Shown here: one piece after another, positions 276 to 51,355 of the stretch
Position numbering within the stretch: the first letter of the stretch is position 1
Layout: each line of letters starts with the position of its first letter
Made by a program: the position numbers and the translations under genes
The notes under the pieces: generated by a model
What the model was told of the DNA's origin: nothing
The model's database searches: none
What the model saw: only the letters and a program-made list of their open reading frames with translations
IMG/VR virus record: IMGVR_UViG_3300033997_000136
Coordinates: 124,001-188,000 of that record
Length of the DNA stretch: 64,000 nucleotides
Reading direction: 5' to 3' (one strand)

Positions 276-911
276 TTACGGATAACGAGCAGAGATGTAA
301 TGTGCAAAACGTTTTAACGCTTCCCATGTACGGTTTTTCCAACCGTTCATAAAATCTTCATTGGCTTCACGCTTCAATGAGATTTCAACGTAATGTACGT
401 TTTGGAATCCATCTAACAACATGTACAGTTGGTCTACTGCTTCAGAACTACCTTTGTTGCGTTTGAAATACGCATTTAAAGAACTGATGGTTTGACCGCC
501 AATTGAACCATCAATGGTAATATCAGGATAATCCACACTACGGCGGTTTAACACATTCAGTATTTTTTGGATAGATGTACCGACGTTACCACGACCAGCG
601 TTTACACCAAAATCCAATACCTTCTCAGCCAACATAGGACTTAATGCGTATATTTCGTGACAACGCATTTTCTCCCACCATGAGGTACGATATATCTCTT
701 GTGCCAATGCGATTGGAAGGGTTTTCATATCTCCATCCCAATTGTATTTTGGCCACAGGTGTTTGTGTTCTAATGCAGTAGCCACTGTGATACCATGATT
801 AGTGGCTTTCCCTGTATCGCTAGGATGGTCGACATATCCTGATTCAACACCACATAAGTGGTCGATAATTTCTTGTTCAGTCATTGCTTTAACTGGCATA
901 ATAAACTCCAT
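276..911 (-). CDS. Endolysin, glycoside hydrolase family 108 with C-terminal peptidoglycan-binding domain
   Basis: VESGYVDHPSDTGKATNHGIT matches the GH108 EGGYxxxPxDxGGxTxxGIT motif; DFGVNAG; C-terminal IDGSIGGQT and FMNGWKNR. Confidence 0.9.
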   Translation of the reverse strand: MEFIMPVKAMTEQEIIDHLCGVESGYVDHPSDTGKATNHGITVATALEHKHLWPKYNWDGDMKTLPIALAQEIYRTSWWEKMRCHEIYALSPMLAEKVLDFGVNAGRGNVGTSIQKILNVLNRRSVDYPDITIDGSIGGQTISSLNAYFKRNKGSSEAVDQLYMLLDGFQNVHYVEISLKREANEDFMNGWKNRTWEALKRFAHYISARYP

Positions 912-23208: not shown

Positions 23209-23265
23209 ATAGAAGAGACTAGAGAGGGGAAACCCTCTCTAGTCTTCTTTATTTTTTGTTTATGG
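23209..23265. repeat. 57-bp direct repeat, copy 1 (bidirectional terminator cassette)
   Basis: ATAGAAGAGACTAGAGAGGGGAAACCCTCTCTAGTCTTCTTTATTTTTTGTTTATGG, identical to 36581-36637. Confidence 0.9.
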
Positions 23266-36580: not shown

Positions 36581-36637
36581 ATAGAAGAGACTAGAGAGGG
36601 GAAACCCTCTCTAGTCTTCTTTATTTTTTGTTTATGG
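36581..36637. repeat. 57-bp direct repeat, copy 2 (bidirectional terminator cassette)
   Basis: Identical to 23209-23265. Confidence 0.9.
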
Positions 36638-38581
36638 TCTATCTGTTGAACGAGATAATGCAGAGACAACTTGTCCCGGTACAGTACCGTTCCACACAGC
36701 AGCCCAACGTGCTGGACTTTTCCATTCCTGAAAGGCTTGTATTTTACGAGTCAAGTTAATCTTAACACGTGACCATGATTCGATTTGTTCAACCATGGAC
36801 ATACTACCAAGTACAGCGATGTAATCGTTAAAGGTATTATCGTGGTCAAAGATACCCGGTGAAGCATTGATTGGCATAGCAAGTGACGTAGACAAAGAGG
36901 CTATTTCAAAACTAATATCAATACCCAGTGGTTGTTGCTCGCGAGTCCACCCTACATTACCTACACCGCGTCTAAAGTTAGCATTCTTTAAAAGACCTAA
37001 GCGTGTTTGCGCACGACCTTTGTCATAAAGTTCTAACAAGAACGGAGAGTCGTATGCTGCCTTACCTACACTCTTTGGGAGTGCAAGAGCTAACACACAT
37101 GAGACGGGTAACCACAAGTTTAACACACGACTTAACGGGTCACCTGACCATGAACGACATTCCATGGTGTATGACATCGTTGGTAGCTGTGCAAACGAAT
37201 CAGCCCACATCTCTGGAATATCCACAAACGCAGCACCTGCTAACGCACGTAATCCAGATACGTTGAATGAATCCATCACACCAAAGGCAAAGTCTTTTAC
37301 ACTGTTGACACTGGCTTCTAACGTGGATGCAACTGGACCATCACCAATGTTACCCCCTGACAAGTCAAACATCTTACTACGCATATCCGCAGATGTACCA
37401 TTGATACTTTGCTTTAACGCAGACTCTTGACTTGTACTTCCAAACGATTCATCTGCAGTCCCTGTATGGTTTACTCGAAGTGTTAAGAACTGACCACCAT
37501 CCCGAGCTTCTGCAATCGCAAAGTCAACAAAGCTACTAAACCATGAACCTGCTTTTTCCACAGGGTCAGTGACTGAGTAATCTGGTTTAGCTGCATCGGT
37601 TTTCTCCCATGCTGCAAGATAAGCATCAAGTGATGCTTTACCACCAAACGCACCACCTGGGTCAGTGACTTTCTCTTTTGCGTATTCTGCCATTTTACCA
37701 CGAAGGTCAGCGAGTGAACCACCGGTAGATGCAGCTTCTATTGCACGACGACGAGATACGTCTGCCATACGTTGTGCTCGGTTCGATAAAGCATACGCAT
37801 CGATACCACCACCGGGTTGGAAGATGTCTGGGAAATACTTGTGATAGATAGCTAAATCACCAGACGTTGGGTTGGAACTTGGGTCTGGGTTTAAGTTACC
37901 TGAGTTGTATGTTTTTACTTTATCATCAAGTTTCTGACCTGTAGCTGCGTTAGCATCGGTTGAGAATACCCGAGGAATAAAGCCCATTGTTACCAAGATA
38001 CCGTTTAAGATGGTATTGACCGATTGCCAGTACAAAGGCATCGTTGGTTTTAAATAGTAAAACTGACCTGATGGTTGGTCGGTTAAAAAACGATACGCTT
38101 GTCCAATTAAAATAATAGGTGCTAGTGGTAATGTCACTACAAAACCAGTGGCACGACCTAGGTAATAGAAGAACCCAGGTGCTCTACCTGTCTTAGACAG
38201 GATGGCTGCTTTACCATCAAAGAATCCAGTAAAGAACGTAGTGATTGAGTTAAATTGCGCAACACCAGCACGAATATGAATCAGTTGACTATTGTCTGCT
38301 ATCGTGGTCGCATACTTACGACCTACCCCATTGGACGTTAAACTCCGTGATTGTACTTGTTGGTCACGAGGTGATGCAAATTTAGAAGACACTCGTAAAT
38401 CAGCAGTACGCGGCAATTGGGGTGGTGGGTTAATTTCAAAGCTACCACCAGGAGATGTATCTGTGAAGCGAAGATTCGCATCAGTAAAAAGACGGTTCCT
38501 TGCATCAAGTAAGTTACCTGCATGTTTAGGTAACAAGAAGGCAGTTTGTGCCCATTTGTCATCGGTGACAGGACGAGCCAT
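36632..38581 (-). CDS. Baseplate/tail structural protein (phiKZ gp182-like)
   Basis: Start refined to ATG 38581 (AGGAG RBS). FTDTSPGGS.EINPPPQ..R.AD, GVAQFNS, IPE.W.DS and YDSPFL.ELYDKGR motifs; directly downstream of the gp181-like gene. Confidence 0.75.
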   Translation of the reverse strand: MARPVTDDKWAQTAFLLPKHAGNLLDARNRLFTDANLRFTDTSPGGSFEINPPPQLPRTADLRVSSKFASPRDQQVQSRSLTSNGVGRKYATTIADNSQLIHIRAGVAQFNSITTFFTGFFDGKAAILSKTGRAPGFFYYLGRATGFVVTLPLAPIILIGQAYRFLTDQPSGQFYYLKPTMPLYWQSVNTILNGILVTMGFIPRVFSTDANAATGQKLDDKVKTYNSGNLNPDPSSNPTSGDLAIYHKYFPDIFQPGGGIDAYALSNRAQRMADVSRRRAIEAASTGGSLADLRGKMAEYAKEKVTDPGGAFGGKASLDAYLAAWEKTDAAKPDYSVTDPVEKAGSWFSSFVDFAIAEARDGGQFLTLRVNHTGTADESFGSTSQESALKQSINGTSADMRSKMFDLSGGNIGDGPVASTLEASVNSVKDFAFGVMDSFNVSGLRALAGAAFVDIPEMWADSFAQLPTMSYTMECRSWSGDPLSRVLNLWLPVSCVLALALPKSVGKAAYDSPFLLELYDKGRAQTRLGLLKNANFRRGVGNVGWTREQQPLGIDISFEIASLSTSLAMPINASPGIFDHDNTFNDYIAVLGSMSMVEQIESWSRVKINLTRKIQAFQEWKSPARWAAVWNGTVPGQVVSALSRSTDRP

Positions 38582-38645: not shown

Positions 38646-41600
38646 TCATCTATCAAGTGCCAACGTTGTAGGTGGTCTACTTGGTCCACTACTCTTCGGA
38701 GCAGACTCTCGCATCTGTTCGGTTTTACGAACAGTGTTTTGAACTGCTTTATTAACCTGTCCTTCTGGAACAGGTGCAGCATTGCTTACATTCCCTGAAC
38801 GTTTACTAATGGACTCAGCAGCCGCTTCAGGGTCTAACAATAACTCACGAATATCGCGAAGACTTCTATCCATAGACGTCTGTAGCAATACTTGAGTCGT
38901 GAGTATTTCAGCAATGTGTCGCATACTGCTTGTGGTTTGATTGGAACGAGCCGTGTTTGCTGTTTGTGTCTGTACAGACGACATTGCTACACGTTGTTGC
39001 TCTTTCTCAATTTCCCCTTGCAATTGGGAATCACTCATACTGGATGCGTTCATACCAAGTGTCATTGCAGAGAGTGAACCAGCACCTACACCAGGAATCG
39101 GATTCACTGGTGTACTTCCCACCATTTTCACAGAGTCCATCGATTCATTCTCTGGAACTGTAGTTTCTTTTGGTGGTGCCATCATCAGCATCGGTGGAAC
39201 TGTTGCTGCACCTAACGTCCGTGTTTGTGGTGTAAATGATGGTGTAGGTTGTGGTGCATTTAAACTAGGTACACTACGGTTAAACGGATACAACAACGGA
39301 GCAGGTGCTGACGTCATTGATTTGACCGTTTGTTTTTGAGGTGTTGTATTTGCTAACGATTTCTCAGAACCAATCAATGATGTTTTCAATGATTTTTCCA
39401 TGTTCTGTACATCACCAATTCCTTTGGTTAACGTTTGACGTTCCATATCTACAAATGGTGATGTTAATTCGCTATACGCAGATTTTAAATGCGTACTGTC
39501 AGCAACTTTTAAGAAGAACCGTTTCTTGTCTTCTTCAGATAAATCATCATCTAAATCGTCTAAATCAGCTGACTTGTCAATCTGATTCAAAACAGTAAGA
39601 TGTGTTAAGTACACTGGTTTAAAGCGGGTTTCAAACCACTTTGCAAATCTATCAACATGTTGTGCGTTATCTGGTTGGATACCACACGTTTCAATGATGT
39701 CATTTAAATCGTCATCATCTAACCGCGATAAGTTTGCTTGACCTGTGTCTTTATCGTAATACACATAATCCTCTAACGTAGATTCAATAGAGTTGATACG
39801 ACGAACCATATCTCCATCTGTTGAATCAATACCGTATTGCGTTAAACGATACGTATGTAAGTCACCATTAGGTTTCCCATCAAAGTACCGCCACAACGCA
39901 TACCCACCTGCTGCTGTCGCTGCGACTGCTAACCCTGGGAGTAATAGTGGAGATGCAATCACTGCACCAATAGCTGCTGCACCCGTACTGGCTGCCGCTG
40001 CCGCACCACTTGCTAACGCACTTCCAGCAGTGACTGCCAACGGAGCTGCTGCTAACGCAAGACGACCTGCTCCCGCAGCTAAACCTCCAGCACCTCTGGC
40101 TAAACTACCCGCACCTCGCGCTAAGCTTCCAGCTCCGCGTTTAAGTGCTCCACCTGCACGTCGTATTCTACCCGGTTTCTTTTGTGGAGTAGTAGGACTT
40201 GTTGTTGGTCCGCGATTACGTCCGTCCATATCGATATCAATCTCAGGAACAAATCCGTCACCACCACCGCCAAACATATCACCCAATCCACCCAATATAC
40301 CTTTCCCTTCACCCAATCCAAACAATGCAGCTAAACCACCCCCTAATTTCCCTAGAAGTGATTTTGACTTATCATGTCCTTTATGGTCTTTCATTTTACG
40401 ACGCGCTTCATCGTCTTCGTTTTTCCGTTTGCTAAAGATATCTTGCCAACTTCCTTTACGAATTCGATTTGGTTTTGGGATACGGTCATTTAACAATGCA
40501 TAGATTTTATTCAATACATCATTTGACTTTCCAACACCAGTGGCAGTTTGTTGTTCAAACTGAGCTTCCACAGACGCTTCAGGAGGCAAACCAAGTGCAC
40601 CCCGTACTGCACGCTTCCCTATTCGGAATCCGCCACCTAAGACCGTTCCAGCGGCTTTAAACGCAGTTGAATAGACAGACTTCACTAACCCCACAGTTTT
40701 TGTTGCAGCAGACTTCAAGAAACCACCTAGGGCTTTAAATTTACGACCATCGGGTCCAATCAACCCTTTCTTTAAATCTTCCACACTAATCACTACATTT
40801 CCTTCATTGTCAATAACCTCACCTTTAATGTCTCGGATGGTTTTAATGACATCTCCAGAAACTTTATCTCTGTAAAGACCTCGTTCCATAAGTATCTTTA
40901 AAAGACGTGGTGTCTCTTCACCTTTTACGTAGACATCGGTTGGTCGATTAACAACACCAAATATGCGCTCTTTTGCAAACGTAAACACACTACGTCCTGC
41001 TTTAAACAACGCACCGTATCCTGTCGCAGCAAAACGCCCATAGGCAAATGCAGCACTTCGAATACCCTGTCCTATTTTCACACCAATCGGCTCACCCGTT
41101 GGTGCAATCAATCTATTCTGTTCAATGTCCTCTAGTTTAATAACCAGATTACCTTCTTTGTCGTAGACTGGACCTTTGATATCGTCAAATGAATGAATAG
41201 GTTTACCATCAGCATCAACAAACTCACCTTCCTTTAATTGCTTAGCTGTAATAACTGGTTCCTGTTCACCTTTTAGATAAATATCGCTGACTGCTCGTGA
41301 TTTACCTAATAATCCTAAACCAATGTTACGGGCACCACTTAAACCAGCACCTGCGGCTTTTACACCTAACTTAGCACTGAGTAATGCACCTTTGCCTGCA
41401 AGTTTAAATGTTGCTGCATACGCTTTCCCTGTGAATCTCAAAAGACCCATGGTTCCACGTTTTGCAAGACCTACACCTTTACCCGCTAATTCACCTGCTG
41501 CACCAAAGTTTCTACGAACAAACCCTGATTCATTGGCTGCAAGTGCACCACCCACACCAGCTACACCGCCTGCTAAAATAGCTTGTGTGTTTTCGGCTGT

Positions 41601-44600
41601 GGCTTCTTTTAAGTATGTAACTTCCTCACGAAGTGCTTCAAGTGCTTGAGTTAATGTATCAGTCGGTGGAGTTGTACCTCCTAGTGAAGTTCCCACAACA
41701 GGAGCCTCTCCTGTGCGCACACCATCAAACCACGATTTTACAGACTCAAAGCCCTGTAACATAGATGTATGAATACTGTTTGCTTTCGCTGCAGCATCAA
41801 ATTCACCCAGTTGACTTTTTATCCGTTCTATCAACGATGCTTTTACAAGCTGTTCATCATTAGACGCTTCTTTGTTTGGGTCTACACCAAAGAGTTCTTT
41901 TAACCGAACACCAATCTGGGTATCTTCAAACTTACCGCGTTGTGATTTTAACTCTTCTAACACTCTATCAATTTCAGACACAAAAGAATCTGACAATTGA
42001 TTAAACGACACACTGTCATCACCAGATATACGTTTGTATTGTGCATCAAACGAATCGCGTAACGTTAGTGCTTGGTCATCCAATTTACGCCACAGTTCAT
42101 CCTTTAATTCAATGATGTTTTGTTTTGAAGACTGTACACTAAAATCACCTTTCTCATCTTTAAATGTTCCGGTAAGTTTAGACCACTTATCTTCAATACC
42201 AGCACGTGTATCGCGTGCAATTCCTTCAACAAACATCGCTGTTCCATGTTCCTTACCAAACACGCTGATAAGGGACTGAAGTTCTTTTTCCTTTTCCTTT
42301 AACGAATCAGGTAATTCAAACTTAGGAAGTTTGTCTTTAAATTCATTGAACATTCCTTTTACAGAATCTAACTTCTCATCAAGAGCATAGTCTTTTCTGA
42401 GCGAATCAAACTTGTTTGTCAAGTCAAATTTATCGTCAGCTTTGGCGTACCATGTTGAAAGTGTTGAACCAATTGAATCTTTTACTTGAGACCCTTTTGA
42501 TTGAATCACATCCAGTGCATTGTATCCATTGCGTTTTGCATCATCCAAAATTAATTCAGCAGCGGCTTTAGGACCGTATGCATCTACTAATTCTTTATAC
42601 ACAGTAATCTTTTCAGTTATCTGTGTAGTGACACTACCGACTTTCTCTTTCACTTGAGTAGGCACATACTCTTGCACTTTACTCACACCTGATGCAAGTG
42701 CTGATTTTCCTTTTCGCATGGCGTCGTCAGCTAAAAGCTCTAACGCACCTTGATGACCATAGTCCTTTGCTAACTCGTCATATAACGCTTTCTGCTCTTT
42801 TGTAAAAGCAGCAAGATTGTCAAACTGTTTGGTCATTGCATCTTTGATTGTTGTCACCTGCGATGATAGTGTTGACATCACAGATGGACCACCATCTGGT
42901 CCTGGCGGTGGGCTTTGTGGTCCTGACCCCGGTCCTGTTGGTGGTGTAGGTGGAGGTTTACCCCATCCATTTAAAATGGTGTAGATTTCTTCTAACCACA
43001 AATTAGACATGTCCACACGACCAGATAACCCCTCTACACCTTCTAGGTATTGATTGGCAACTGAGAGCTGCATGTTCATACTGTCTAATCGCGACCCTAA
43101 TCCACTTAAATCAAATTGAGATTGATTCACGGGTTGTTGTGGTACAGCATCAAGAGGTTGTTGTCTAGCAGGAACTAACGCACTTGGGCGCGGAGCGTAA
43201 CGTTTGTCATCAATCACATAATCAGAAAATGCTGAGCGATTTAACAACGAACGACCATCTCGCCCTTCGTTCAATATACCAAGGTCCTTTAAAAGACTTG
43301 TTCCATAAAACGGCGTTTGTAGTGCAGCAGCACGTTGTACGTTTGGTACATCCTCAATAATCCGTTTATAGTCATTCGCAAGTTTATTACGAAGTGTTTT
43401 AACGGATGCGTCTTTCTTGACTTTATCACCATCCATAAAACGGGTAGCTATAGCAGAGATAATTTCTTGACGGTACTCTTGTGCCACATTGTCCAACCGG
43501 TCTGGTTGTAAATAGCGGTCTAATGAGAAACCATATCCCTGCGCCATATCGCTGATAAACTGTTTCCCTAATTCACTGCGTGCTTTAGGAGATAACAATG
43601 TACCTGATGGGTCTAATTGGTCAATCAGCGCATTAATGCTTTCACGAACATTCTTCAGTTTTTCAGCAGGAAGAATCTCTTCCATGATGTCAGCTTTTAC
43701 TACGTCTGAGCGAGTAAACTCGTCACGGTTAAAGTTGAACTGAAGTTTCTTAACCGTATCATCGCCAGTTAACATCCGTTCATTCACATGAAGGATTTCA
43801 GTTAAAAGACCAGGAATGATTTGTGTGATTGCTTTATCTGCTAATGCATTGTACGTGAAGTTCTCTTCAAGTAACTTTTCTTTACTAAGACCTACCGTGT
43901 CAACGCGCTTCATTTGAGGTGCAACTTCAAGCAAGGTATCCGCAATTACACCCAATGCTTTGTTTGCAACACTTCCTGTGTTGCGTTTAAACTTCTCAGC
44001 AATGCTTCGTTCAATTGGACGACCATCTTCGTCTACGTCATCCTCAGCGGTTGTGATGCCAATGCTTCTGTCGCCGTATTTACCCGATAGCTGTTCAAGC
44101 TTTTCGCGTATTAACGTAGGTGCGTTCTTAACCGCATATTCAGCATCAGCGCCGACGCCCATGATACTGTTGTTTCCAGTAGTCAAAGGTCGAATAAACT
44201 TAGCTAATATTTCACCTGTTTTTTGCGTAAGAAAACCACCAGCTACACTGCCTACAGTTTCTTTTGCGTCAACACCACTTTCACCGGCTAATTCAATAGC
44301 ATCTGCAACATCTGTTACGTTGCTTGCAAATCCTTTTGCTTTTTCACCCACTGCTTTTAAGATGTTTTTCTTAAAGTTAGGAAGGTAGTCGTTTAAAAAT
44401 TCAGCCGCATCTTGTTGCAAATCACCGATGATACGTTCACGCAACATCATCGCAGACGTTTCTCCTAAACGCATCTTCACAAAGTCAGGCAATCCTGTAT
44501 TCTTTGTAATAGAAGCAAGAGCGTCTTTAGCGATAACTTTGTAGTCTTTAAATTCAGACAACAAGTCTTGTTGAGTAAACAATGAACGGTATTGAAGTTC

Positions 44601-45254
44601 AAGATGTTTACGTTGATAACCTGTTAACACCGTGTTTTGGAATGCAACTACTTTTTCACCAGAACGACGAATTACATCCAATAAACCAATTGTGTTATGA
44701 TGACGTTTATCTTCAATAACCTCTGCGGCAAGATCACGTTGTTCTTGGTCACTTGCAAGGTATTGTTGATGTTCCATTTGGGTTTTGAAGATGTCATTTA
44801 ACTGACTGTCAATTTCCATTTGCTGCCAATCCATTTTAGCAGCATCAACATCATCCGTACTTTCTGAAAACGATTTTAAACGTTTGCTGATACCCTCCGG
44901 TAAAATACTATCTACAGCAGGGAGTAATCGTTTGGTTATTTTCCGAAAAGCGCGACGGGCTGGCGCAAGCTCCCTCGCTGTCGTATCGTATAGGTCTCGA
45001 CCAAACTCGATGCCGTCAGAGACTCCGTCGTACGCGACGGAGTAACTTTCAGGCAATGATTCTTTTACGAGTTTACGACGAAATTCTGGAGACACTACAG
45101 TGTCTTTTGCACCCTGTACAGCGCCACGTTTAATTGCTTCTACAGGGTTACGGTCTTTCTTTTTACCACCTGAATCTAACTCAGGTAAAAATTCATCACC
45201 GCCAAAGTCAAGATCGTCTAGATCAAAACTATCTAAATCGATATCTTTAGCCAT
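38646..45254 (-). CDS. Large tail (tape measure-like) protein, phiKZ gp181-like
   Basis: 2202 aa; KDRNPV, KHLELQYR, ITKNTGLPDFVK, AITQIIPGLL and RLTQYG..WFETRFKPV motifs; divergent from the vRNAP beta-prime gene as in phiKZ. Confidence 0.85.
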   Translation of the reverse strand: MAKDIDLDSFDLDDLDFGGDEFLPELDSGGKKKDRNPVEAIKRGAVQGAKDTVVSPEFRRKLVKESLPESYSVAYDGVSDGIEFGRDLYDTTARELAPARRAFRKITKRLLPAVDSILPEGISKRLKSFSESTDDVDAAKMDWQQMEIDSQLNDIFKTQMEHQQYLASDQEQRDLAAEVIEDKRHHNTIGLLDVIRRSGEKVVAFQNTVLTGYQRKHLELQYRSLFTQQDLLSEFKDYKVIAKDALASITKNTGLPDFVKMRLGETSAMMLRERIIGDLQQDAAEFLNDYLPNFKKNILKAVGEKAKGFASNVTDVADAIELAGESGVDAKETVGSVAGGFLTQKTGEILAKFIRPLTTGNNSIMGVGADAEYAVKNAPTLIREKLEQLSGKYGDRSIGITTAEDDVDEDGRPIERSIAEKFKRNTGSVANKALGVIADTLLEVAPQMKRVDTVGLSKEKLLEENFTYNALADKAITQIIPGLLTEILHVNERMLTGDDTVKKLQFNFNRDEFTRSDVVKADIMEEILPAEKLKNVRESINALIDQLDPSGTLLSPKARSELGKQFISDMAQGYGFSLDRYLQPDRLDNVAQEYRQEIISAIATRFMDGDKVKKDASVKTLRNKLANDYKRIIEDVPNVQRAAALQTPFYGTSLLKDLGILNEGRDGRSLLNRSAFSDYVIDDKRYAPRPSALVPARQQPLDAVPQQPVNQSQFDLSGLGSRLDSMNMQLSVANQYLEGVEGLSGRVDMSNLWLEEIYTILNGWGKPPPTPPTGPGSGPQSPPPGPDGGPSVMSTLSSQVTTIKDAMTKQFDNLAAFTKEQKALYDELAKDYGHQGALELLADDAMRKGKSALASGVSKVQEYVPTQVKEKVGSVTTQITEKITVYKELVDAYGPKAAAELILDDAKRNGYNALDVIQSKGSQVKDSIGSTLSTWYAKADDKFDLTNKFDSLRKDYALDEKLDSVKGMFNEFKDKLPKFELPDSLKEKEKELQSLISVFGKEHGTAMFVEGIARDTRAGIEDKWSKLTGTFKDEKGDFSVQSSKQNIIELKDELWRKLDDQALTLRDSFDAQYKRISGDDSVSFNQLSDSFVSEIDRVLEELKSQRGKFEDTQIGVRLKELFGVDPNKEASNDEQLVKASLIERIKSQLGEFDAAAKANSIHTSMLQGFESVKSWFDGVRTGEAPVVGTSLGGTTPPTDTLTQALEALREEVTYLKEATAENTQAILAGGVAGVGGALAANESGFVRRNFGAAGELAGKGVGLAKRGTMGLLRFTGKAYAATFKLAGKGALLSAKLGVKAAGAGLSGARNIGLGLLGKSRAVSDIYLKGEQEPVITAKQLKEGEFVDADGKPIHSFDDIKGPVYDKEGNLVIKLEDIEQNRLIAPTGEPIGVKIGQGIRSAAFAYGRFAATGYGALFKAGRSVFTFAKERIFGVVNRPTDVYVKGEETPRLLKILMERGLYRDKVSGDVIKTIRDIKGEVIDNEGNVVISVEDLKKGLIGPDGRKFKALGGFLKSAATKTVGLVKSVYSTAFKAAGTVLGGGFRIGKRAVRGALGLPPEASVEAQFEQQTATGVGKSNDVLNKIYALLNDRIPKPNRIRKGSWQDIFSKRKNEDDEARRKMKDHKGHDKSKSLLGKLGGGLAALFGLGEGKGILGGLGDMFGGGGDGFVPEIDIDMDGRNRGPTTSPTTPQKKPGRIRRAGGALKRGAGSLARGAGSLARGAGGLAAGAGRLALAAAPLAVTAGSALASGAAAAASTGAAAIGAVIASPLLLPGLAVAATAAGGYALWRYFDGKPNGDLHTYRLTQYGIDSTDGDMVRRINSIESTLEDYVYYDKDTGQANLSRLDDDDLNDIIETCGIQPDNAQHVDRFAKWFETRFKPVYLTHLTVLNQIDKSADLDDLDDDLSEEDKKRFFLKVADSTHLKSAYSELTSPFVDMERQTLTKGIGDVQNMEKSLKTSLIGSEKSLANTTPQKQTVKSMTSAPAPLLYPFNRSVPSLNAPQPTPSFTPQTRTLGAATVPPMLMMAPPKETTVPENESMDSVKMVGSTPVNPIPGVGAGSLSAMTLGMNASSMSDSQLQGEIEKEQQRVAMSSVQTQTANTARSNQTTSSMRHIAEILTTQVLLQTSMDRSLRDIRELLLDPEAAAESISKRSGNVSNAAPVPEGQVNKAVQNTVRKTEQMRESAPKSSGPSRPPTTLALDR

Positions 45255-45308: not shown

Positions 45309-46997
45309 ATGGCTAGTTCAACGATTACTAAAATCATTGCACCATTGAATTTAAAACTACTAAACCTTCGTTCTAAACGAGATGTGCTTCGGATGTTACC
45401 TCGCATCACATCGCAAGATATTTACGAGACAGCCAATAGTACCAATTTCCACTCTGAGGGTTTATTTTCTACGGAGATATTTGGTCGCGTAGGAGACCCT
45501 CGTCGCGATACTCAGTTTGCATGGATTGATTTACGTGCTACTATATTACACCCAGCTACGTTTGACCGTGTGGTTCAGGTCAAAGGTTTGTATGGTGAAA
45601 TCATGGCTGGTAAAGCATATGCCGTGTGGGATGAGAAGGCGAAGGAATTTGTTGCAAGTGACGAATTAGAAGGCGATACTGGGTATCACTTCTTTATCTC
45701 TCATTGGAAAGATATTGTCTTCCCTAAAAGTGAAGACAGTGTGAACACCACACCAGGTGAACAAGATTTAACGACTTTACGTAATCAACGTATTGCTGCA
45801 ATTGACAAATACCGAGACATTGCTCTTATTGACACGATTCCGGTTTTACCTGCTGGTTTACGCGACATTGAAATCGATGAAGTAGGTCGTGTTAATGAAG
45901 GTGAGTTAAACCCAATGTATCGAAGCGTACTTCGGATTGTGAACACAATTTCTGATTCGTACGATAAGAACAATGCAGCGCTTGATAATGCTCGGATGGT
46001 TCTTCAATTAGAAGTGAATGCCATTCACCAATATTGGTTAGACTTGTTGTTTGGTAAAACAGGTTTCTTACAATCAAAATGGGCAAGTCGTAAAATCGTC
46101 AACGGTACACGGAACGTTATCTCTGCAATGAATGCAGTAGTGCACGATTTAGACGATGAAGAAAGCGTAGGTTCAAATGACACGATTGTAGGTTTATGGC
46201 AAGTATCACGCGGATGTTTACCTATCACACGCCCTGCTATTCGTCGTTTCTTAATTGATGATATTTTCTCATCAGCCGACGGTATGATTCAATTAATCGA
46301 TAAGAAGACATTGAAGTTAGTGAGTGTGCAACCCACACCACGTGCGTTTGATGCATGGACAACAAATACAGGGTTAGAGAAACTTATCAATTCTCAAAGT
46401 GTGTTTGAACTTCGTAATCGACCAATACTTGTGGATGACTACTATCTTGCATTGGTTTATCGCCCACGTCGTTCTACTGTCTTTAAAGTGTTTCGTGATA
46501 TCACTACACTCCCTGAAGGGTTTTCTAAAGATGATGTTTACCCTATTACACTCATGGAACTTATCTATTTGTGTAACTATCAGAATTGGAACAAAGTAAA
46601 AGTGTTTATTACACGGTATCCAATCACAGGTGAGGGTAGTATTTATCCAAGTAATGTGCGTGTCGCAACAACCACTCGAAGTGAAAAGCGGTATGAGTTG
46701 GATGATGATTGGGTGACATATAAGTACCCTGATAGCCCAGCATCTGCGTTCCCTGACTTTGAAGAAGGGAAGTACATTGATACGACCATGGTACATCCAT
46801 TCCGTGTAGCGGGACTTGGTGCGGATTTTGACGGTGACCAGACATCCAATAACTTCATTTATACACAAGAAGGTATCGATGAAATTAATACGTATCTGAG
46901 CACTGCAAACGCATACATTGACCCAGCTGGTGGATTTCGCTCAAGTGTAGCGACCGATGTACTCGCACTTGTTTTGCGTAACTCAACAACATTGTAG
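45309..46997 (+). CDS. Virion RNA polymerase, beta-prime N-terminal subunit (phiKZ gp180-like)
   Basis: GLFSTEIFGR, PVLPAGLRD, GFLQSKWASRKIVNGTRNV, TRYP, and the catalytic GADFDGD motif. Confidence 0.92.
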   Translation: MASSTITKIIAPLNLKLLNLRSKRDVLRMLPRITSQDIYETANSTNFHSEGLFSTEIFGRVGDPRRDTQFAWIDLRATILHPATFDRVVQVKGLYGEIMAGKAYAVWDEKAKEFVASDELEGDTGYHFFISHWKDIVFPKSEDSVNTTPGEQDLTTLRNQRIAAIDKYRDIALIDTIPVLPAGLRDIEIDEVGRVNEGELNPMYRSVLRIVNTISDSYDKNNAALDNARMVLQLEVNAIHQYWLDLLFGKTGFLQSKWASRKIVNGTRNVISAMNAVVHDLDDEESVGSNDTIVGLWQVSRGCLPITRPAIRRFLIDDIFSSADGMIQLIDKKTLKLVSVQPTPRAFDAWTTNTGLEKLINSQSVFELRNRPILVDDYYLALVYRPRRSTVFKVFRDITTLPEGFSKDDVYPITLMELIYLCNYQNWNKVKVFITRYPITGEGSIYPSNVRVATTTRSEKRYELDDDWVTYKYPDSPASAFPDFEEGKYIDTTMVHPFRVAGLGADFDGDQTSNNFIYTQEGIDEINTYLSTANAYIDPAGGFRSSVATDVLALVLRNSTTL

Positions 46998-47005
46998 GGT
47001 TTTTT

Positions 47006-50000
47006 ATGAAATCATATTTACAGCGAATTGAAGAATTGTTACAAGGCGATATTACCCTTGAAGCAAAATACTTCAAAGAGTTTTACCGTGTGTACGGTAT
47101 TCGCAATCAAAGCATGTTGATATCACCAAAAGTTTCACCTATCAGTGCGTTTGAAATGCCTTTGGAATCCGTGGCACACCATTTTAGCTTTGATGATGTG
47201 TTGTTAGGTCCTGAGCCAAAAGGCAGTGTGTATTCTACAAATAGTGGTCGTGTATTGATTGAGCATATCTCTGCACTTCACGACCCTGTTGGAAAACCGC
47301 TACCTGCACCAGGTGCAAATGCTGAACGACTGGCACGTGATTATCATCGTCGAGTAAAAGTGTTTCGTCCAGCGCAAGACTTTGAACGGAGTCTTCGTGA
47401 TAACAAAACTCTGGTGGTAGAGAACTATGCACTTTTAAACAAGTTGTATCGTTATCAATTATCCGTGTATAGCAACATCTACAAATGGACAAACATCTTA
47501 CGTGCTGCTTTCTTTAACCTCGGTAAGAAAGTACCGATGTCAGATAGACAGCACTATGTGTTTTTAGAGTTACCAGCCATTATTCCAGATATAGTGATGT
47601 TAAATCAATCATCTGGTGCCATTACTGCGATTAAGCGGGAGTTCTTAGAAGTCTTCTCAAAACCAGAAGCGTTAATGATTCTGGAACTTTGGAAATGGAT
47701 GGGGAAACCTATCAAGCAAAAAGTAGACGGAAAAGAAACGGTTGGTCCTCGTCCGAGTGTGTTTGATTACATTGCACCTGAGCAGTTAGCAAAGATTAAC
47801 TTGGTCTGGTTAGACAATGGAAACTGGATACTTTTAAACCTGGGTACATTTGTTGAATTGTCGAAGATGGACAAAGGTGAAGAGATTGAAGGGAGTAACA
47901 CCGTTCAACGTCGTTTCCTTCGCATGTTAATCATGTTGATGAGTCAACGTGTGGATGTCACTGAAACTGCCACTGATATTGAATCAACGATTGACGCGGA
48001 TGTTGCAAAAGAAGACATCGTTGAGACCAAACATGTTGTTCGTGATGCACTCAAATCTATCGAAGCTAACCCGTACGATGATTCCGATTTACCTAATTTG
48101 GATATCGTTCAGGATGAACAATTGGTTAGCGTTGATGATGTTAAATCAAAAGAACAGCAACAAATAGATGAAGAGATTGAAATCCAAAAAGATTTAGATA
48201 TGCTTCGTCGGTTAAATGAGCGTAAGTTAGCACCACAAGCTCAGACAACTATTGTGGATGTTGTTCAACCTCCTAAAACTCCTATTGAACGTTTGAATCG
48301 TAAAATAGAAGACAAGGTTGAGAAGGGTGAATTAACTGCAGCAGAATATCGTCGTGCTAAGAAATTATACGACAACATGCTTGCACTGGACAACCCATTT
48401 GGTGATGGAAAGTTACAAGACTTTATTGTTGTTTTTGAAGAGTTGAAACAGATTACTGAAGAAGAGTCTGTAAAACGTATTAAGAACATTCGTGGTGTTG
48501 TTGACAAATCCATGTTAAAAAGCCGTGTAGATGTCTTTGATAAGAAGTATGTCACACAAGTCATGGAACGACATATTGCTGCAACGATGCTGTCTGTGCA
48601 AGGCGCTGGTCTTATCGCTACTGATTTATCAGTTGAAGAAGTAGTAGATGTGGGTAACCGTTATAAAACGTTACGCCTTCGTCTTTCACCATTAGAAGGT
48701 GAAGGTAGCACTATTGTTGCTCGCATCCCTGTTGTAGACGATGAGGGAACGTTCTTAGCCAACGGTACGAAATGGCGGATGAAGAAGCAAAAAGCGGATA
48801 TCCCTATTCGTAAGACAAGTCCTGTTGAAGTTGCTTTGACAACGTACTATGCAAAAGCATTTGTACATCGTTCTGTGAAAAGTGTAGTCAACTATCCAAA
48901 GTGGTTAAATCGTCAGATTAACTTACTGGAGATGGCAGACAAAGGTGCGGTGAAAATAACGCACGTTAAACGGATTAACACGTTTGTAAACGATGTGACG
49001 TTACCTCGTATCTACACCACACTTTCTATGTCCTTTAAAGAGTTGACTATTGACAAAGACTTACGTTTGTTTGTTGATTATCAACATCGCTTTACAGAGT
49101 TTGGTCAGTCGTTTGTCGAGTCTGTTGAGCGAGAAGGGTTTGTGTTTGCTGGGACACTTAAAGGCAAACCAGTTGTTGTTGACTTTGTAAACATGTTTTA
49201 CGTCGTTGATAATAATCAATTGCTTGAACTAGGTTCATTTGAAAGTCTTCTGAAAGTATCGGAACAAAGCGTTCCTACTGAAGTTGCTGAATTTAGTTTG
49301 TTCACTCGCCAAGTTCCTGTGGGGATTGTACTGGGGTATCGTTACGGGTTAATCAATTTACTTGGTTTATTGAATACTCCGTTTCGCCGTGTGTTAAGTG
49401 GTCAACAGTTAAACCTTGCTGCAAATGAATTTGCTATTCGCTTTAGCGATGAAACCTTAATTGTTTCTCGCGTTGACAAGAAAGCGGAACTTATTCTTGC
49501 GGGATTGAATCGCTATCATGCGTCAATTAAACACTACACGTTGGAGTCGTTTAACAACCCTGATGTGTTTGTTAACGTGCTTGAAGAAAATGGTTTCCGT
49601 ATTGGTTTTGTTCGGGAACTTGATTTAGCTTTTGACATGTTTGTTGACCCTGTAAGTGCTGACATTCTGATATCAATGAATGAACCCACTACGTTGGAAG
49701 AACTGTTGTTACGTTCGTGTGAATTGTTAACTACAGATGCACATCCTGACGAAGTGGATGAATACGCGATGCGTTATCGTGGTTATGAGCGTTTTGCAGG
49801 TCATCTGTACAAAGAGTTGGTTTCTGCTACGCGTCAATTCCGCAGTCGTGGTATTGGTAAAGCAGCAAAACTGAGTATGAACCCAGAAGCGGTTTGGCAG
49901 TCTATCATTGGTGACAGTTCTTGTTCACCGATTGAAGAGAGTAATCCGGTTCAAAACACAAAAGAGAAGGACATCTTTACGTTTGGTGGTACTGGTGGTC

Positions 50001-51355
50001 GTTCTACTCGGAGTATGGTGAAACGTACACGTGCGTATCACAAGAACTCACCGGGGATTGTATCTGAAGCATCAACAGACAGTGGTAGTGTAGGTGTAAA
50101 CGCGTACTTGGCTGCTAATGCGTTATTAACCGATGTGACAGGACGTCCTGACCAGAGTGCAAATAAGAAACTTGAGAGTAGTAACCTGTTTAGTACAACA
50201 GCATTGTTGTCACCTTGTATTGAACACGATGACGCCAAACGAATAGTTTTCGCTAACATTCAGTATTCACATGCGGTTGCGTGTTCTGGATATGAAGTGT
50301 CTCCATTCCGTACAGGAGAGGAGAAAGCGATTGCTCACCGAGTCGGTTCTTTGTTTGCAGGTGTTGCTGAAGAAGATGGTGTCGTCACTGAAGTAAGTGA
50401 CCATGCTGTGGTGGTTGAATACAAAGGTGGTAAAAAGAAATCATTTGAAATTGGAACACGATTTGGTAATGTGACAGGAACCACTGTACCTCACCGTCTT
50501 GTGACTGATTTAAATGTAGGTGATAAAGTAGATATGGGTGATGTAGTGACGTTTAACCAAGGGTTCTTTAAACGAGACCGGTTAGACAAACGTCAATGCA
50601 TGATGATGCCAGGTGTTCTTGCAAAGGTGGCTATTCTTGAAAAGAATAGTACATTTGAAGATGCGTGTGTAATCTCTCCACGTCTTGCTGGGTTGTTTAA
50701 AACCGAACTCACTGAAATTCGTTATATCACTGTACGTTTTGACCAACAGGTTAATAACTTAGTTCGTGTGGGTGCACAGGTAGACCTTGAAAGCATCTTA
50801 TGTACAATTGAAGACGCTGTCACTGCTGATAATGACTTATTTACTGCGGATAACATTGATTTGTTAACCACATTAGCAGCGCAAGCTCCTAGTGCAAACG
50901 TGAAAGGTCGTGTAGAACATATTGAAGTGCTCTATCACGGTGACGTAGAAGATATGGGTGAGTCTATTCGTAAGCTGGTTGATGAAAGTGATAAACAGCG
51001 TAAACGAAAAGCAAAACAGCTCAATGAACCTATTGTTACAGGTGCTGTAGATAGTTCGATTAAAGTAAATAAACAACCTGTTGAGTTAGATACTGCTGTG
51101 ATAAAGATTTACATCACAAAAGAAATCGACGCAGGGTATGGTGATAAAGGTGTTTTAGGTAATCAGATGAAAACGATTATCTCTGATGTAATGATAGGCG
51201 AACATGTCTCTCAGCGCACAAAAACTCCTATCGACATTTATTTCTCGTACTTGTCTATCGCTGCTCGTATCGTGGGGTCACCCGAGTTAATTGGAACCAC
51301 CATCACATTGTTAAAACTCATGAGTCCACGTGTGGCTGATGCTTATTTTGAATGA
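47006..51355 (+). CDS. Virion RNA polymerase, beta N-terminal subunit (phiKZ gp178-like)
   Basis: 1449 aa; NGTKWRMKKQ, GGTGGRS, PCIEHDDAKR..FANIQ, FEDA, GDK..GNQMK RpoB motifs. Confidence 0.92.
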   Translation: MKSYLQRIEELLQGDITLEAKYFKEFYRVYGIRNQSMLISPKVSPISAFEMPLESVAHHFSFDDVLLGPEPKGSVYSTNSGRVLIEHISALHDPVGKPLPAPGANAERLARDYHRRVKVFRPAQDFERSLRDNKTLVVENYALLNKLYRYQLSVYSNIYKWTNILRAAFFNLGKKVPMSDRQHYVFLELPAIIPDIVMLNQSSGAITAIKREFLEVFSKPEALMILELWKWMGKPIKQKVDGKETVGPRPSVFDYIAPEQLAKINLVWLDNGNWILLNLGTFVELSKMDKGEEIEGSNTVQRRFLRMLIMLMSQRVDVTETATDIESTIDADVAKEDIVETKHVVRDALKSIEANPYDDSDLPNLDIVQDEQLVSVDDVKSKEQQQIDEEIEIQKDLDMLRRLNERKLAPQAQTTIVDVVQPPKTPIERLNRKIEDKVEKGELTAAEYRRAKKLYDNMLALDNPFGDGKLQDFIVVFEELKQITEEESVKRIKNIRGVVDKSMLKSRVDVFDKKYVTQVMERHIAATMLSVQGAGLIATDLSVEEVVDVGNRYKTLRLRLSPLEGEGSTIVARIPVVDDEGTFLANGTKWRMKKQKADIPIRKTSPVEVALTTYYAKAFVHRSVKSVVNYPKWLNRQINLLEMADKGAVKITHVKRINTFVNDVTLPRIYTTLSMSFKELTIDKDLRLFVDYQHRFTEFGQSFVESVEREGFVFAGTLKGKPVVVDFVNMFYVVDNNQLLELGSFESLLKVSEQSVPTEVAEFSLFTRQVPVGIVLGYRYGLINLLGLLNTPFRRVLSGQQLNLAANEFAIRFSDETLIVSRVDKKAELILAGLNRYHASIKHYTLESFNNPDVFVNVLEENGFRIGFVRELDLAFDMFVDPVSADILISMNEPTTLEELLLRSCELLTTDAHPDEVDEYAMRYRGYERFAGHLYKELVSATRQFRSRGIGKAAKLSMNPEAVWQSIIGDSSCSPIEESNPVQNTKEKDIFTFGGTGGRSTRSMVKRTRAYHKNSPGIVSEASTDSGSVGVNAYLAANALLTDVTGRPDQSANKKLESSNLFSTTALLSPCIEHDDAKRIVFANIQYSHAVACSGYEVSPFRTGEEKAIAHRVGSLFAGVAEEDGVVTEVSDHAVVVEYKGGKKKSFEIGTRFGNVTGTTVPHRLVTDLNVGDKVDMGDVVTFNQGFFKRDRLDKRQCMMMPGVLAKVAILEKNSTFEDACVISPRLAGLFKTELTEIRYITVRFDQQVNNLVRVGAQVDLESILCTIEDAVTADNDLFTADNIDLLTTLAAQAPSANVKGRVEHIEVLYHGDVEDMGESIRKLVDESDKQRKRKAKQLNEPIVTGAVDSSIKVNKQPVELDTAVIKIYITKEIDAGYGDKGVLGNQMKTIISDVMIGEHVSQRTKTPIDIYFSYLSIAARIVGSPELIGTTITLLKLMSPRVADAYFE

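What the first reader, a model, noticed from the sequence alone, without database searches (positions are those of the whole stretch)
38646..39420. gp181-like tail protein apparently lacks the lytic transglycosylase domain
Established: phiKZ gp181 carries a C-terminal-region lytic transglycosylase used at infection. Seen here: after the conserved RLTQYG...WFETRFKPVYL block there is only ~250 aa of Pro/Ser/Thr/Gln-rich low-complexity sequence, with no ES..GLFQ-type motif anywhere in 2202 aa. Inference: this phage breaches peptidoglycan with another virion protein or without a tail muramidase.
Basis: partly seen in the sequence, partly recalled or inferred. Interest (0 to 1): 0.6.

Follow-up and report, generated by a model that had tools for sequence, protein, structure and literature searches.

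The report
Jumbo-phage tape measure without cell-wall enzyme
The giant tail protein of this phiKZ-like jumbo phage really does lack the cell-wall-cutting enzyme module that phiKZ gp181 and most of its relatives carry. It has not decayed: everything else is kept, including the family's usual C-terminal tail. This is a clean loss of a frequently swapped module, not a new kind of system.

Summary
Window 38646-45254 (-) encodes an intact 2202-aa homologue of phiKZ gp181, the lysozyme-bearing, probable tape-measure tail protein of nucleus-forming jumbo phages. It sits in phiKZ gene order. No peptidoglycan hydrolase domain was found by Pfam, PHROGs, a family-specific SLT profile, profile-profile comparison, six-frame search or AlphaFold2.

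It is a Pro/Ser/Thr-rich linker (residues 1968-2074) followed by the family's conserved C-terminal helical module (2075-2202). That module has dN/dS about 0.05, as constrained as the N-terminal domain. Missing is a cassette of about 500 aa, a second RLTQYG-type module plus the hydrolase, equivalent to phiKZ gp181 1525-2049. A longer helical middle keeps the total length in the family range.

Across relatives the cassette is interchangeable: SLT, GH19, M23, GH73, CHAP, Phage_lysozyme2. A few other lineages show none.

The genome probably closes at about 212 kb. It encodes only two other wall hydrolases: a GH108/PG_binding_3 endolysin and a signal-peptide SLT. Both also occur in a relative that keeps its tail SLT, so neither is an evident substitute.

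Entry without a tail-borne muramidase is the likeliest reading, but it is unproven.

The parts
38646..45254 (-). Gene for the 2202-aa gp181-type tail (probable tape-measure) protein, P0001
   Evidence: ORF and translation. phrog_3201 E 1e-218. BLAST to phiKZ gp181: residues 7-581 and 1285-1966 align with gp181 26-580 and 901-1525. The identical protein is on >=10 contigs.
43215..45254 (-). Conserved N-terminal domain, residues 1-680
   Evidence: phrog_3201 positions 1-663. Aligned to all homologues. dN/dS 0.04-0.06.
41535..43214 (-). Variable, all-helical middle, residues 681-1240; about 370-460 aa longer than in phiKZ, P0004 or pVa-21
   Evidence: No PHROG or Pfam match. AlphaFold2 gives helices only, pLDDT 36. 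dN/dS 0.12-0.14.
39864..41534 (-). Conserved region, residues 1241-1797, ending in an Ala/Gly-rich hydrophobic stretch (1725-1788 = 39891-40082)
   Evidence: phrog_3201 positions 967-1161, plus a tape-measure phrog_1533 match at 1700-1791. Hydropathy windows.
39354..39863 (-). RLTQYG...WFETRFKPVYL module, residues 1798-1967; a single copy here, two copies in many homologues
   Evidence: phrog_3201 positions 1489-1652. Many homologues align twice to this stretch. AlphaFold2 shows a small alpha/beta unit, pLDDT 63-69.
39033..39353 (-). Pro/Ser/Thr-rich linker, residues 1968-2074, predicted disordered; it sits where relatives carry the second module and the hydrolase
   Evidence: pLDDT 25-32 with no secondary structure. 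Pro+Ser+Thr+Gln 44% and dN/dS 0.13-0.21.
38649..39032 (-). Conserved C-terminal helical module, residues 2075-2202 (motif AEILTTQVLLQTSMDRSLRDIRELL)
   Evidence: 95-97% identical among the three clade members, dN/dS ~0.05. A profile of the last 130 aa of 24 hydrolase-bearing homologues hits the full protein only at 2081-2170, i-E 7e-5. hhalign E 3e-4 on the same motif. 0 of 2000 shuffles reach the real score.
36632..38581 (-). phiKZ gp182 homologue (649 aa), immediately downstream; no hydrolase domain
   Evidence: BLAST to phiKZ gp182 E 2e-116. phrog_3181. No Pfam hit. AGGAG ribosome-binding site before the ATG at 38581.
45309..51355 (+). Divergently transcribed virion RNA-polymerase subunit genes (562 and 1449 aa), as next to phiKZ gp181
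   Evidence: phrog_2986 E 3e-179. Gene order compared with phiKZ gp178/gp180/gp181/gp182.
276..911 (-). GH108 + PG_binding_3 protein (211 aa), the likely endolysin; the only other wall hydrolase inside the window
   Evidence: Pfam PF05838 E 8e-19 and PF09374 E 1e-8. phrog_315 endolysin. Homologues in SPN3US and ChrisDB are named endolysin.

Best explanation
This is the gp181-type tail-lumen (probable tape-measure) protein of a nucleus-forming jumbo phage (Chimalliviridae). In this lineage the peptidoglycan-hydrolase cassette has been cleanly excised.

Shown:
- The protein keeps the family's N-terminal domain, the hydrophobic Ala/Gly segment, one RLTQYG module and the family's C-terminal helical module.
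- About 500 aa are missing: the second RLTQYG-type module and the enzyme domain that lie between them in phiKZ (gp181 1525-2049).
- A ~107-aa disordered Pro/Ser/Thr-rich linker stands in their place.
- Two relatives at 86% and 82% identity have the same architecture.
- All parts are under purifying selection.

Inferred:
- The protein still serves as tail-length ruler and as an ejected membrane-crossing protein. A longer helical middle restores the total length to the family norm.
- The virion crosses the wall by sheath-driven puncture without its own muramidase. Lysis from within is left to the GH108 endolysin and perhaps the exported SLT.

The confidence given covers the anatomy and family assignment; the enzyme-free entry step alone I put at about 0.45.
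For: Family membership and gene order.

Absence of any hydrolase. AlphaFold2 shows only helices and disorder in residues 1968-2202 and 681-1240. Only about 110 residues lie between the RLTQYG module and the C-terminal module, too few for a lysozyme-like domain.

The C-terminal module is homologous in position to that of hydrolase-bearing relatives.

Conservation and selection. The identical gene occurs in six samples.

The cassette is labile in the family:
- Relatives carry SLT, GH19, M23, GH73, CHAP or Phage_lysozyme2.
- Close sisters carry different cassettes (P0011 SLT, P0016 GH19).
- The cassette type changes at least 7-12 times on the N-domain tree.
- P0032 and P0033 also show none. For these two, Pfam covered only the C-terminal part and only the SLT profile covered the full length.

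Length compensation.

The genome probably closes on itself, since its ends overlap by 1085 bp at 96.9% identity. It holds only two other wall hydrolases.

phiKZ orf181 is described as a lysozyme-containing, probably tape-measure, essential gene (bioRxiv 10.1101/2025.11.23.690004).
Against: - No virion proteome or activity data exist for this uncultured phage, so the ruler role, virion location and enzyme-free entry are all inferred.
- Both AlphaFold2 models are of low confidence (pLDDT 43 and 36) because only three sequences were available.
- The match of the C-terminal module to the family profile is weak (12 bits) and lies in compositionally biased sequence. A direct BLAST to the phiKZ gp181 tail is not significant.
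- Pfam's SLT model under-calls this subfamily. Pfam may equally miss an unusual hydrolase in another virion protein.
- CheckV rates the record 77% complete, and a 304,688-bp contig carrying the same protein is on record. A missing genome part therefore cannot be wholly excluded.
- The tree is a quick search, and this clade sits on a long, unplaced branch. "Loss" rests on parsimony: the nine closest distant homologues (P0004-P0012) all carry an SLT.
Confidence: 0.8

Rival explanations
1. The hydrolase function moved to another virion protein. Either the GH108/PG_binding_3 protein is packaged as well as acting as endolysin, or an unrecognised enzyme fold sits in a baseplate, spike or fibre protein.
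For: The GH108 gene lies at the end of a minus-strand block of tail-fibre genes, so it is probably a late gene. Most ORFs of the genome have no Pfam match, which leaves room for unrecognised folds. Pfam is shown to miss divergent SLT domains.
Against: The GH108 protein is conserved in relatives that keep their tail hydrolase (SPN3US, Eowyn, ChrisDB, pVa-21), so it is not a lineage-specific replacement. It matches the PHROG endolysin family. No other ORF matches any cassette type used by the family.
Confidence: 0.25
2. Domain fission: the SLT was split off from the tail protein and now acts as the free 242-aa SLT encoded 47 kb away.
For: The free SLT matches exactly the part of the gp181 family profile that this protein lacks (phrog_3201 positions 2016-2185, E 1e-33). 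It is 33-39% identical to SLT domains embedded in homologues. It keeps the catalytic Glu and the GLFQ motif.
Against: It carries a Sec-type signal peptide, with a ribosome-binding site before that ATG, so it should be exported rather than packaged. It lies among small non-structural genes. Vibrio phage pVa-21 has an orthologous signal-peptide SLT (32% identity over 207 aa) and also an SLT inside its gp181 homologue. The free gene therefore predates or is independent of the loss.
Confidence: 0.07
3. The missing domain is an artefact: a frameshift, a truncated assembly, or a decaying gene in a defective phage.
For: The record comes from a metagenome and is flagged linear and 77% complete.
Against: The frame is open for all 2202 codons. 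It ends 65 nt before the well-placed gp182 start. No SLT remnant exists in any frame. The identical protein occurs in six samples, and two diverged relatives (dS ~0.9) share the architecture with dN/dS 0.09.
Confidence: 0.02

Closest known systems
Pseudomonas phage phiKZ gp181 (2237 aa; structural peptidoglycan hydrolase, probable tape measure)
   Same: Same gene position, between the virion RNA-polymerase genes and gp182. Homologous N-terminal domain and region 1285-1966. Similar total length. Similar Pro/Ser/Thr-rich then helical C-terminal tail.
   Different: gp181 has about 350 extra residues plus an SLT domain at 1872-2044. This protein has neither, and instead has a helical middle about 380 aa longer.
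gp181 homologues with other cassettes: Burkholderia phage FLC9 (GH19), Vibrio phages BONAISHI and Yong MS32 (M23), metagenomic P0025 (GH73), P0026 (CHAP), P0034 (Phage_lysozyme2)
   Same: Same scaffold and same cassette position, upstream of the C-terminal tail.
   Different: They hold an enzyme in the cassette position. Here it is empty.
Metagenomic homologues P0032 and P0033 (no hydrolase detected), and P0023 and P0030 (only faint SLT-like traces)
   Same: Further members of the family without a recognisable hydrolase. The state is therefore not unique to this clade.
   Different: They lie on different branches of the tree and have different lengths (2116-3704 aa). They were not examined as closely, and Pfam covered only the C-terminal part of P0032 and P0033.
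Tape-measure or ejection proteins with optional muralytic modules in other phages (T5 Pb2, mycobacteriophage TM4 tape measure, T7 gp16)
   Same: An optional wall-cutting module on a long ejected tail or core protein. From my own knowledge of the published work, such modules are dispensable under good growth conditions (T7 gp16, TM4).
   Different: No sequence relationship was shown here. Those are siphophage or podophage proteins. This comparison concerns the way of working, not family membership.

Membership tests
phiKZ gp181-type tail protein (PHROG 3201) | Conserved N-terminal domain of about 650 aa | tested here: met
   phrog_3201 positions 1-663, E 1e-218 overall. BLAST to gp181 26-580.
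phiKZ gp181-type tail protein (PHROG 3201) | Conserved distal region with hydrophobic Ala/Gly segment and RLTQYG-type module | tested here: met
   phrog_3201 positions 967-1161 and 1489-1652. BLAST 1285-1966 to gp181 901-1525. Hydropathy.
phiKZ gp181-type tail protein (PHROG 3201) | Gene position: divergent from the virion RNA-polymerase genes, followed by the gp182 homologue | tested here: met
phiKZ gp181-type tail protein (PHROG 3201) | Conserved C-terminal tail after the enzyme | tested here: met
   The tail profile hits only residues 2081-2170, i-E 7e-5. hhalign E 3e-4. 0 of 2000 shuffles reach the score. The signal is weak, and pairwise BLAST to phiKZ is not significant.
phiKZ gp181-type tail protein (PHROG 3201) | Embedded peptidoglycan hydrolase domain | tested here: not met
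   This feature is variable in kind across the family and is undetected in a few other members, so it does not decide family membership.
phiKZ gp181-type tail protein (PHROG 3201) | Location in the tail and role as length ruler | not testable with these tools
   Needs virion proteomics or cryo-EM of an isolate.
Virion-associated peptidoglycan hydrolases / SLT (PF01464, GH23) | Lysozyme-like catalytic domain with the catalytic Glu (E-S) and G-L-x-Q motifs | tested here: not met
   No Pfam hit at E<=1. No hit with the family-specific SLT HMM at E<=10, although the same HMM scores phiKZ gp181 at 3e-62. hhalign probability 0.1%.
Chimalliviridae (the genome as a whole) | Chimallin, PhuZ-type tubulin, phiKZ-type capsid protein, S80 prohead protease, split multi-subunit RNA polymerases | tested here: met
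   Pfam hits: PF25677 9.7e-43, PF00091 3e-8, PF25620 1.6e-142, PF20034 3.6e-59, and RNA_pol Rpb1/Rpb2 domains.

The most novel reading that the evidence does not exclude
A whole clade of nucleus-forming jumbo phages from subsurface, soil and wastewater habitats injects its genome with no virion-borne cell-wall enzyme at all. Its tape-measure protein made up the lost ~500 aa by lengthening its helical middle. If so, the enzyme is an accessory on a ruler whose length is the selected trait.
Probability: 0.4. Interest if true: 0.45.

Novelty: new variant of a known kind. Interest (0 to 1): 0.35.

Why it matters
gp181's lytic transglycosylase is the textbook tail-borne wall enzyme of phiKZ-like phages. 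In phiKZ the gene is essential and tolerates no transposon insertion. This locus shows that the enzyme is an exchangeable cassette on a conserved scaffold: at least six enzyme types occur in relatives, and several lineages show none. A natural, well-conserved lineage does without it. That offers a ready-made natural deletion for asking whether wall hydrolysis is needed for contractile injection by jumbo phages, and under which host conditions. It also carries an annotation warning: "gp181-like" should not be taken to mean "muralytic", and Pfam's SLT model under-calls this subfamily.

Tried and rejected
- Fission hypothesis (the free SLT as the detached domain). Rejected, because pVa-21 has both an orthologous signal-peptide SLT and an embedded one.
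- Downstream 649-aa gene as carrier of the enzyme. Rejected: it is the gp182 homologue and has no hydrolase match.
- Frameshifted remnant of the enzyme. Rejected: the six-frame SLT search found nothing in the gene.
- Other hydrolase families. M23, GH19, GH24 and Amidase_2 gave no six-frame match in the genome. Cassette sequences taken from homologues gave no match in any ORF.
- Close relatives in IMG/VR: none found.
- DNA-level match in the phage collection: none.
- PDB sequence search: no hit.
- ESM Atlas look-alikes for residues 1945-2202 and 681-1240: only chance-level rows, none lysozyme-like.
- Internal repeats in the protein by self-BLAST: none significant.
- Homologues first counted as lacking a hydrolase. 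P0013, P0015 and P0019 (no gathering-level Pfam SLT call) and HPP-Temi (none at E<=0.01) do carry the SLT. P0027 has a weak VanY match.
- Not run: fold search, because both models have pLDDT 36-43 and the matches would be meaningless.
- Not run: the large representative-protein search.
- Not run: read laying and complex prediction, as no claim here depends on them.

Full report
**The object.** Window 38646-45254 (-) is one open frame of 2202 codons. It matches PHROG 3201, the phiKZ gp181 family, at E 1e-218. It aligns with phiKZ gp181 over residues 7-581 and 1285-1966.

The gene order is that of phiKZ. Two virion RNA-polymerase subunit genes are transcribed divergently upstream, at 45309-46997 and 47006-51355. 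A gp182 homologue follows 65 nt downstream at 36632-38581, E 2e-116 to phiKZ gp182.

The rest of the record has chimallin, a PhuZ-type tubulin, the phiKZ capsid protein and the S80 protease. The phage is therefore a chimallivirus. [quoted passage not shown]

**Is the enzyme absent?** Yes, by every test available.
- Pfam finds nothing at E<=1 in the whole protein or in residues 1780-2202.
- The PHROG profile is matched only up to position 1652 of 2408.
- A six-frame SLT search of the whole 213-kb record gives one hit, in another gene.
- Pfam's SLT model proved insensitive for this subfamily. It missed the domain in Pseudomonas phage HPP-Temi at E<=0.01. I therefore built a profile from 13 SLT domains embedded in homologues plus the free SLT.
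- That profile scores phiKZ gp181 (1872-2044) at 3e-62 and HPP-Temi at 2e-62. It gives nothing for this protein at E<=10, and nothing for any other ORF of the genome.
- Profile-profile comparison with the full-length clade alignment gives probability 0.1%.
- AlphaFold2 on 1780-2202 shows a small alpha/beta unit at 1799-1895, long helices, a disordered stretch at 1968-2074 and helices at 2075-2183. On 681-1240 it shows helices only. Both models are of low confidence, so they add little by themselves.
- Only about 110 residues lie between the last conserved module and the C-terminal module. That is too few for a lysozyme-like domain.

**What the flagged ~250 aa are.** They are not debris. Two relatives (P0002 at 86% and P0003 at 82% identity overall) are 92% and 90% identical over 1780-2202.

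Codon analysis gives these dN/dS values:

| Region | dN/dS |
|---|---|
| Residues 2075-2202 | ~0.05 (the same as the N-terminal domain) |
| Pro/Ser/Thr-rich linker | 0.13-0.21 |
| Whole protein | 0.09 |

Synonymous divergence (dS) is near 0.9 across the whole protein.

A profile of the last 130 aa of 24 hydrolase-bearing homologues, phiKZ among them, hits the full 2202-aa protein at one place only. That place is 2081-2170, in register with the C-terminus (i-E 7e-5). hhalign aligns the same motif (AEILTTQVLLQTSMDRSLRDIRELL) at E 3e-4. None of 2000 composition-matched shuffles reaches the real score. Pairwise BLAST to the phiKZ tail alone is not significant, so this homology is supported but weak.

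The tail is thus the family's usual post-enzyme C-terminal module.

**What is missing.** In P0004 the order is RLTQYG module, second copy of it, SLT (about 1873-1964), then tail. In phiKZ the stretch 1525-2049 has no counterpart here. About 500 aa are therefore absent.

The variable helical middle between the N-terminal domain and the next conserved block is about 580-700 aa here. It is 320 aa in phiKZ, 188 in P0004 and 202 in pVa-21. Total length, 2202 aa, stays inside the family's usual 2100-2450. I read this as compensation that preserves a ruler length. That is an inference.

**The family context.** Of 31 distant homologues found by the word search, most carry a wall hydrolase, of differing kinds.
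- SLT is the commonest. It includes three proteins (P0013, P0015, P0019) that Pfam did not call at its gathering threshold.
- The others are GH19, M23, GH73 glucosaminidase, CHAP, Phage_lysozyme2 and a weak VanY.
- Cultured examples agree: FLC9 has GH19, BONAISHI and Yong MS32 have M23, and Noxifer, LucasX, Xoo-sp14, pVa-21, HPP-Temi and phiKZ have SLT.
- On a quick tree of the N-terminal domain, sisters with 100% support differ in cassette (P0011 SLT, P0016 GH19). The cassette type needs at least 7-12 changes.
- P0032 and P0033 show no hydrolase. For them Pfam covered only the C-terminal part and the SLT profile the full length. P0023 and P0030 show only faint SLT-like traces.

Loss of the cassette is therefore a recurrent event in a family where the cassette is freely exchanged. 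The clade studied here sits on a long, unplaced branch. Calling its state a loss rests on the fact that the nine closest distant homologues (P0004-P0012) all carry an SLT.

**Other wall enzymes in the genome.** The first 1085 bases of the record repeat at its end at 96.9% identity. The assembly therefore wraps round, and the genome is probably complete at about 212 kb, despite the "linear, 77%" label.

I scanned all 228 remaining greedy ORFs of at least 70 aa against Pfam. I also ran six-frame searches for M23, GH19, GH24, Amidase_2 and GH108. Only two wall hydrolases appear.
- A 211-aa GH108 + PG_binding_3 protein at window 276-911 (-). It has no signal peptide and matches the PHROG endolysin family. 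It lies at the end of a tail-fibre gene block. It is conserved in SPN3US, Eowyn, ChrisDB and pVa-21, where it is named endolysin.
- A 242-aa SLT at G000:115335-116063, outside the window. It has an N-terminal MKTVLFLLLTLVAFNSNA signal-peptide-like sequence, a ribosome-binding site before that ATG, and an intact catalytic Glu and GLFQ motif. It lies among small non-structural genes. This SLT matches the very part of the gp181 profile that the tail protein lacks.

That match suggested fission. However, Vibrio phage pVa-21 has an orthologous signal-peptide SLT (gp134) and also an SLT inside its gp181 homologue gp165. I therefore reject fission.

**Mechanism proposed.** The protein most likely still fills the tail tube as the length ruler and is ejected ahead of the DNA. 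Its hydrophobic segment (1725-1788) would suit membrane insertion.

In this lineage the wall would be crossed by the force of sheath contraction alone, or with help from an enzyme I cannot recognise. From my own knowledge of published work, muralytic modules of T7 gp16 and the TM4 tape measure are dispensable in well-growing hosts. That makes such a loss plausible.

None of these functional steps is shown by the data here.

**Verdict.** The thing is a new variant of a known kind, of moderate to low interest. Its main values are as a natural deletion for testing the need for tail-borne wall hydrolysis, and as a warning for annotation.

**Habitat.** The exact sequence occurs in subsurface and soil metagenomes of one study. 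Small shares occur in wastewater and freshwater runs.

Noticed in passing
G000:C1:1-1085 and 212066-213150 (outside the window): The two ends of the 213,150-bp record repeat each other at 96.9% identity over 1085 bp. The assembly wraps round, and the genome is probably complete at ~212 kb although flagged linear and 77% complete. The protein index nevertheless lists a 304,688-bp contig carrying the same tail protein, which is unexplained.
   Followed up: partly
window 23209-23265 and 36581-36637: An exact 57-bp direct repeat. The second copy lies in the gap between the convergent gp182-like gene and the 362-aa gene on the + strand. It may be a shared terminator or regulatory element.
   Followed up: no
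G000:C1:115335-116063 (+), = L001:1426-2154, outside the window: A free-standing 242-aa lytic transglycosylase with a Sec-type signal peptide. It has an orthologue in Vibrio phage pVa-21 (gp134) that also carries a signal peptide. An exported SLT alongside a cytoplasmic GH108 endolysin is an unusual pair of lysis enzymes for a chimallivirus.
   Followed up: partly
window 276-911 (-): A GH108 + PG_binding_3 endolysin candidate sits directly downstream of a block of tail-fibre genes (window 1501-4041 and 6464-9208, both -).
   Followed up: partly
L031:3402-10166 (Pseudomonas phage HPP-Temi) and proteins P0013, P0015, P0019: Pfam's SLT model fails to call, or calls only below its threshold, the SLT domain of several gp181 homologues. 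A family-specific profile or BLAST finds these domains at E 1e-14 to 2e-62. Annotations of "no domain" in this family should be treated with care.
   Followed up: yes
P0008:2152-2274 and L027 (Xanthomonas phage Xoo-sp14 gp172): Some gp181 homologues carry a DUF5675 domain (PF18925) in addition to the SLT, on either side of it. This is a second accessory cassette of unknown role.
   Followed up: no
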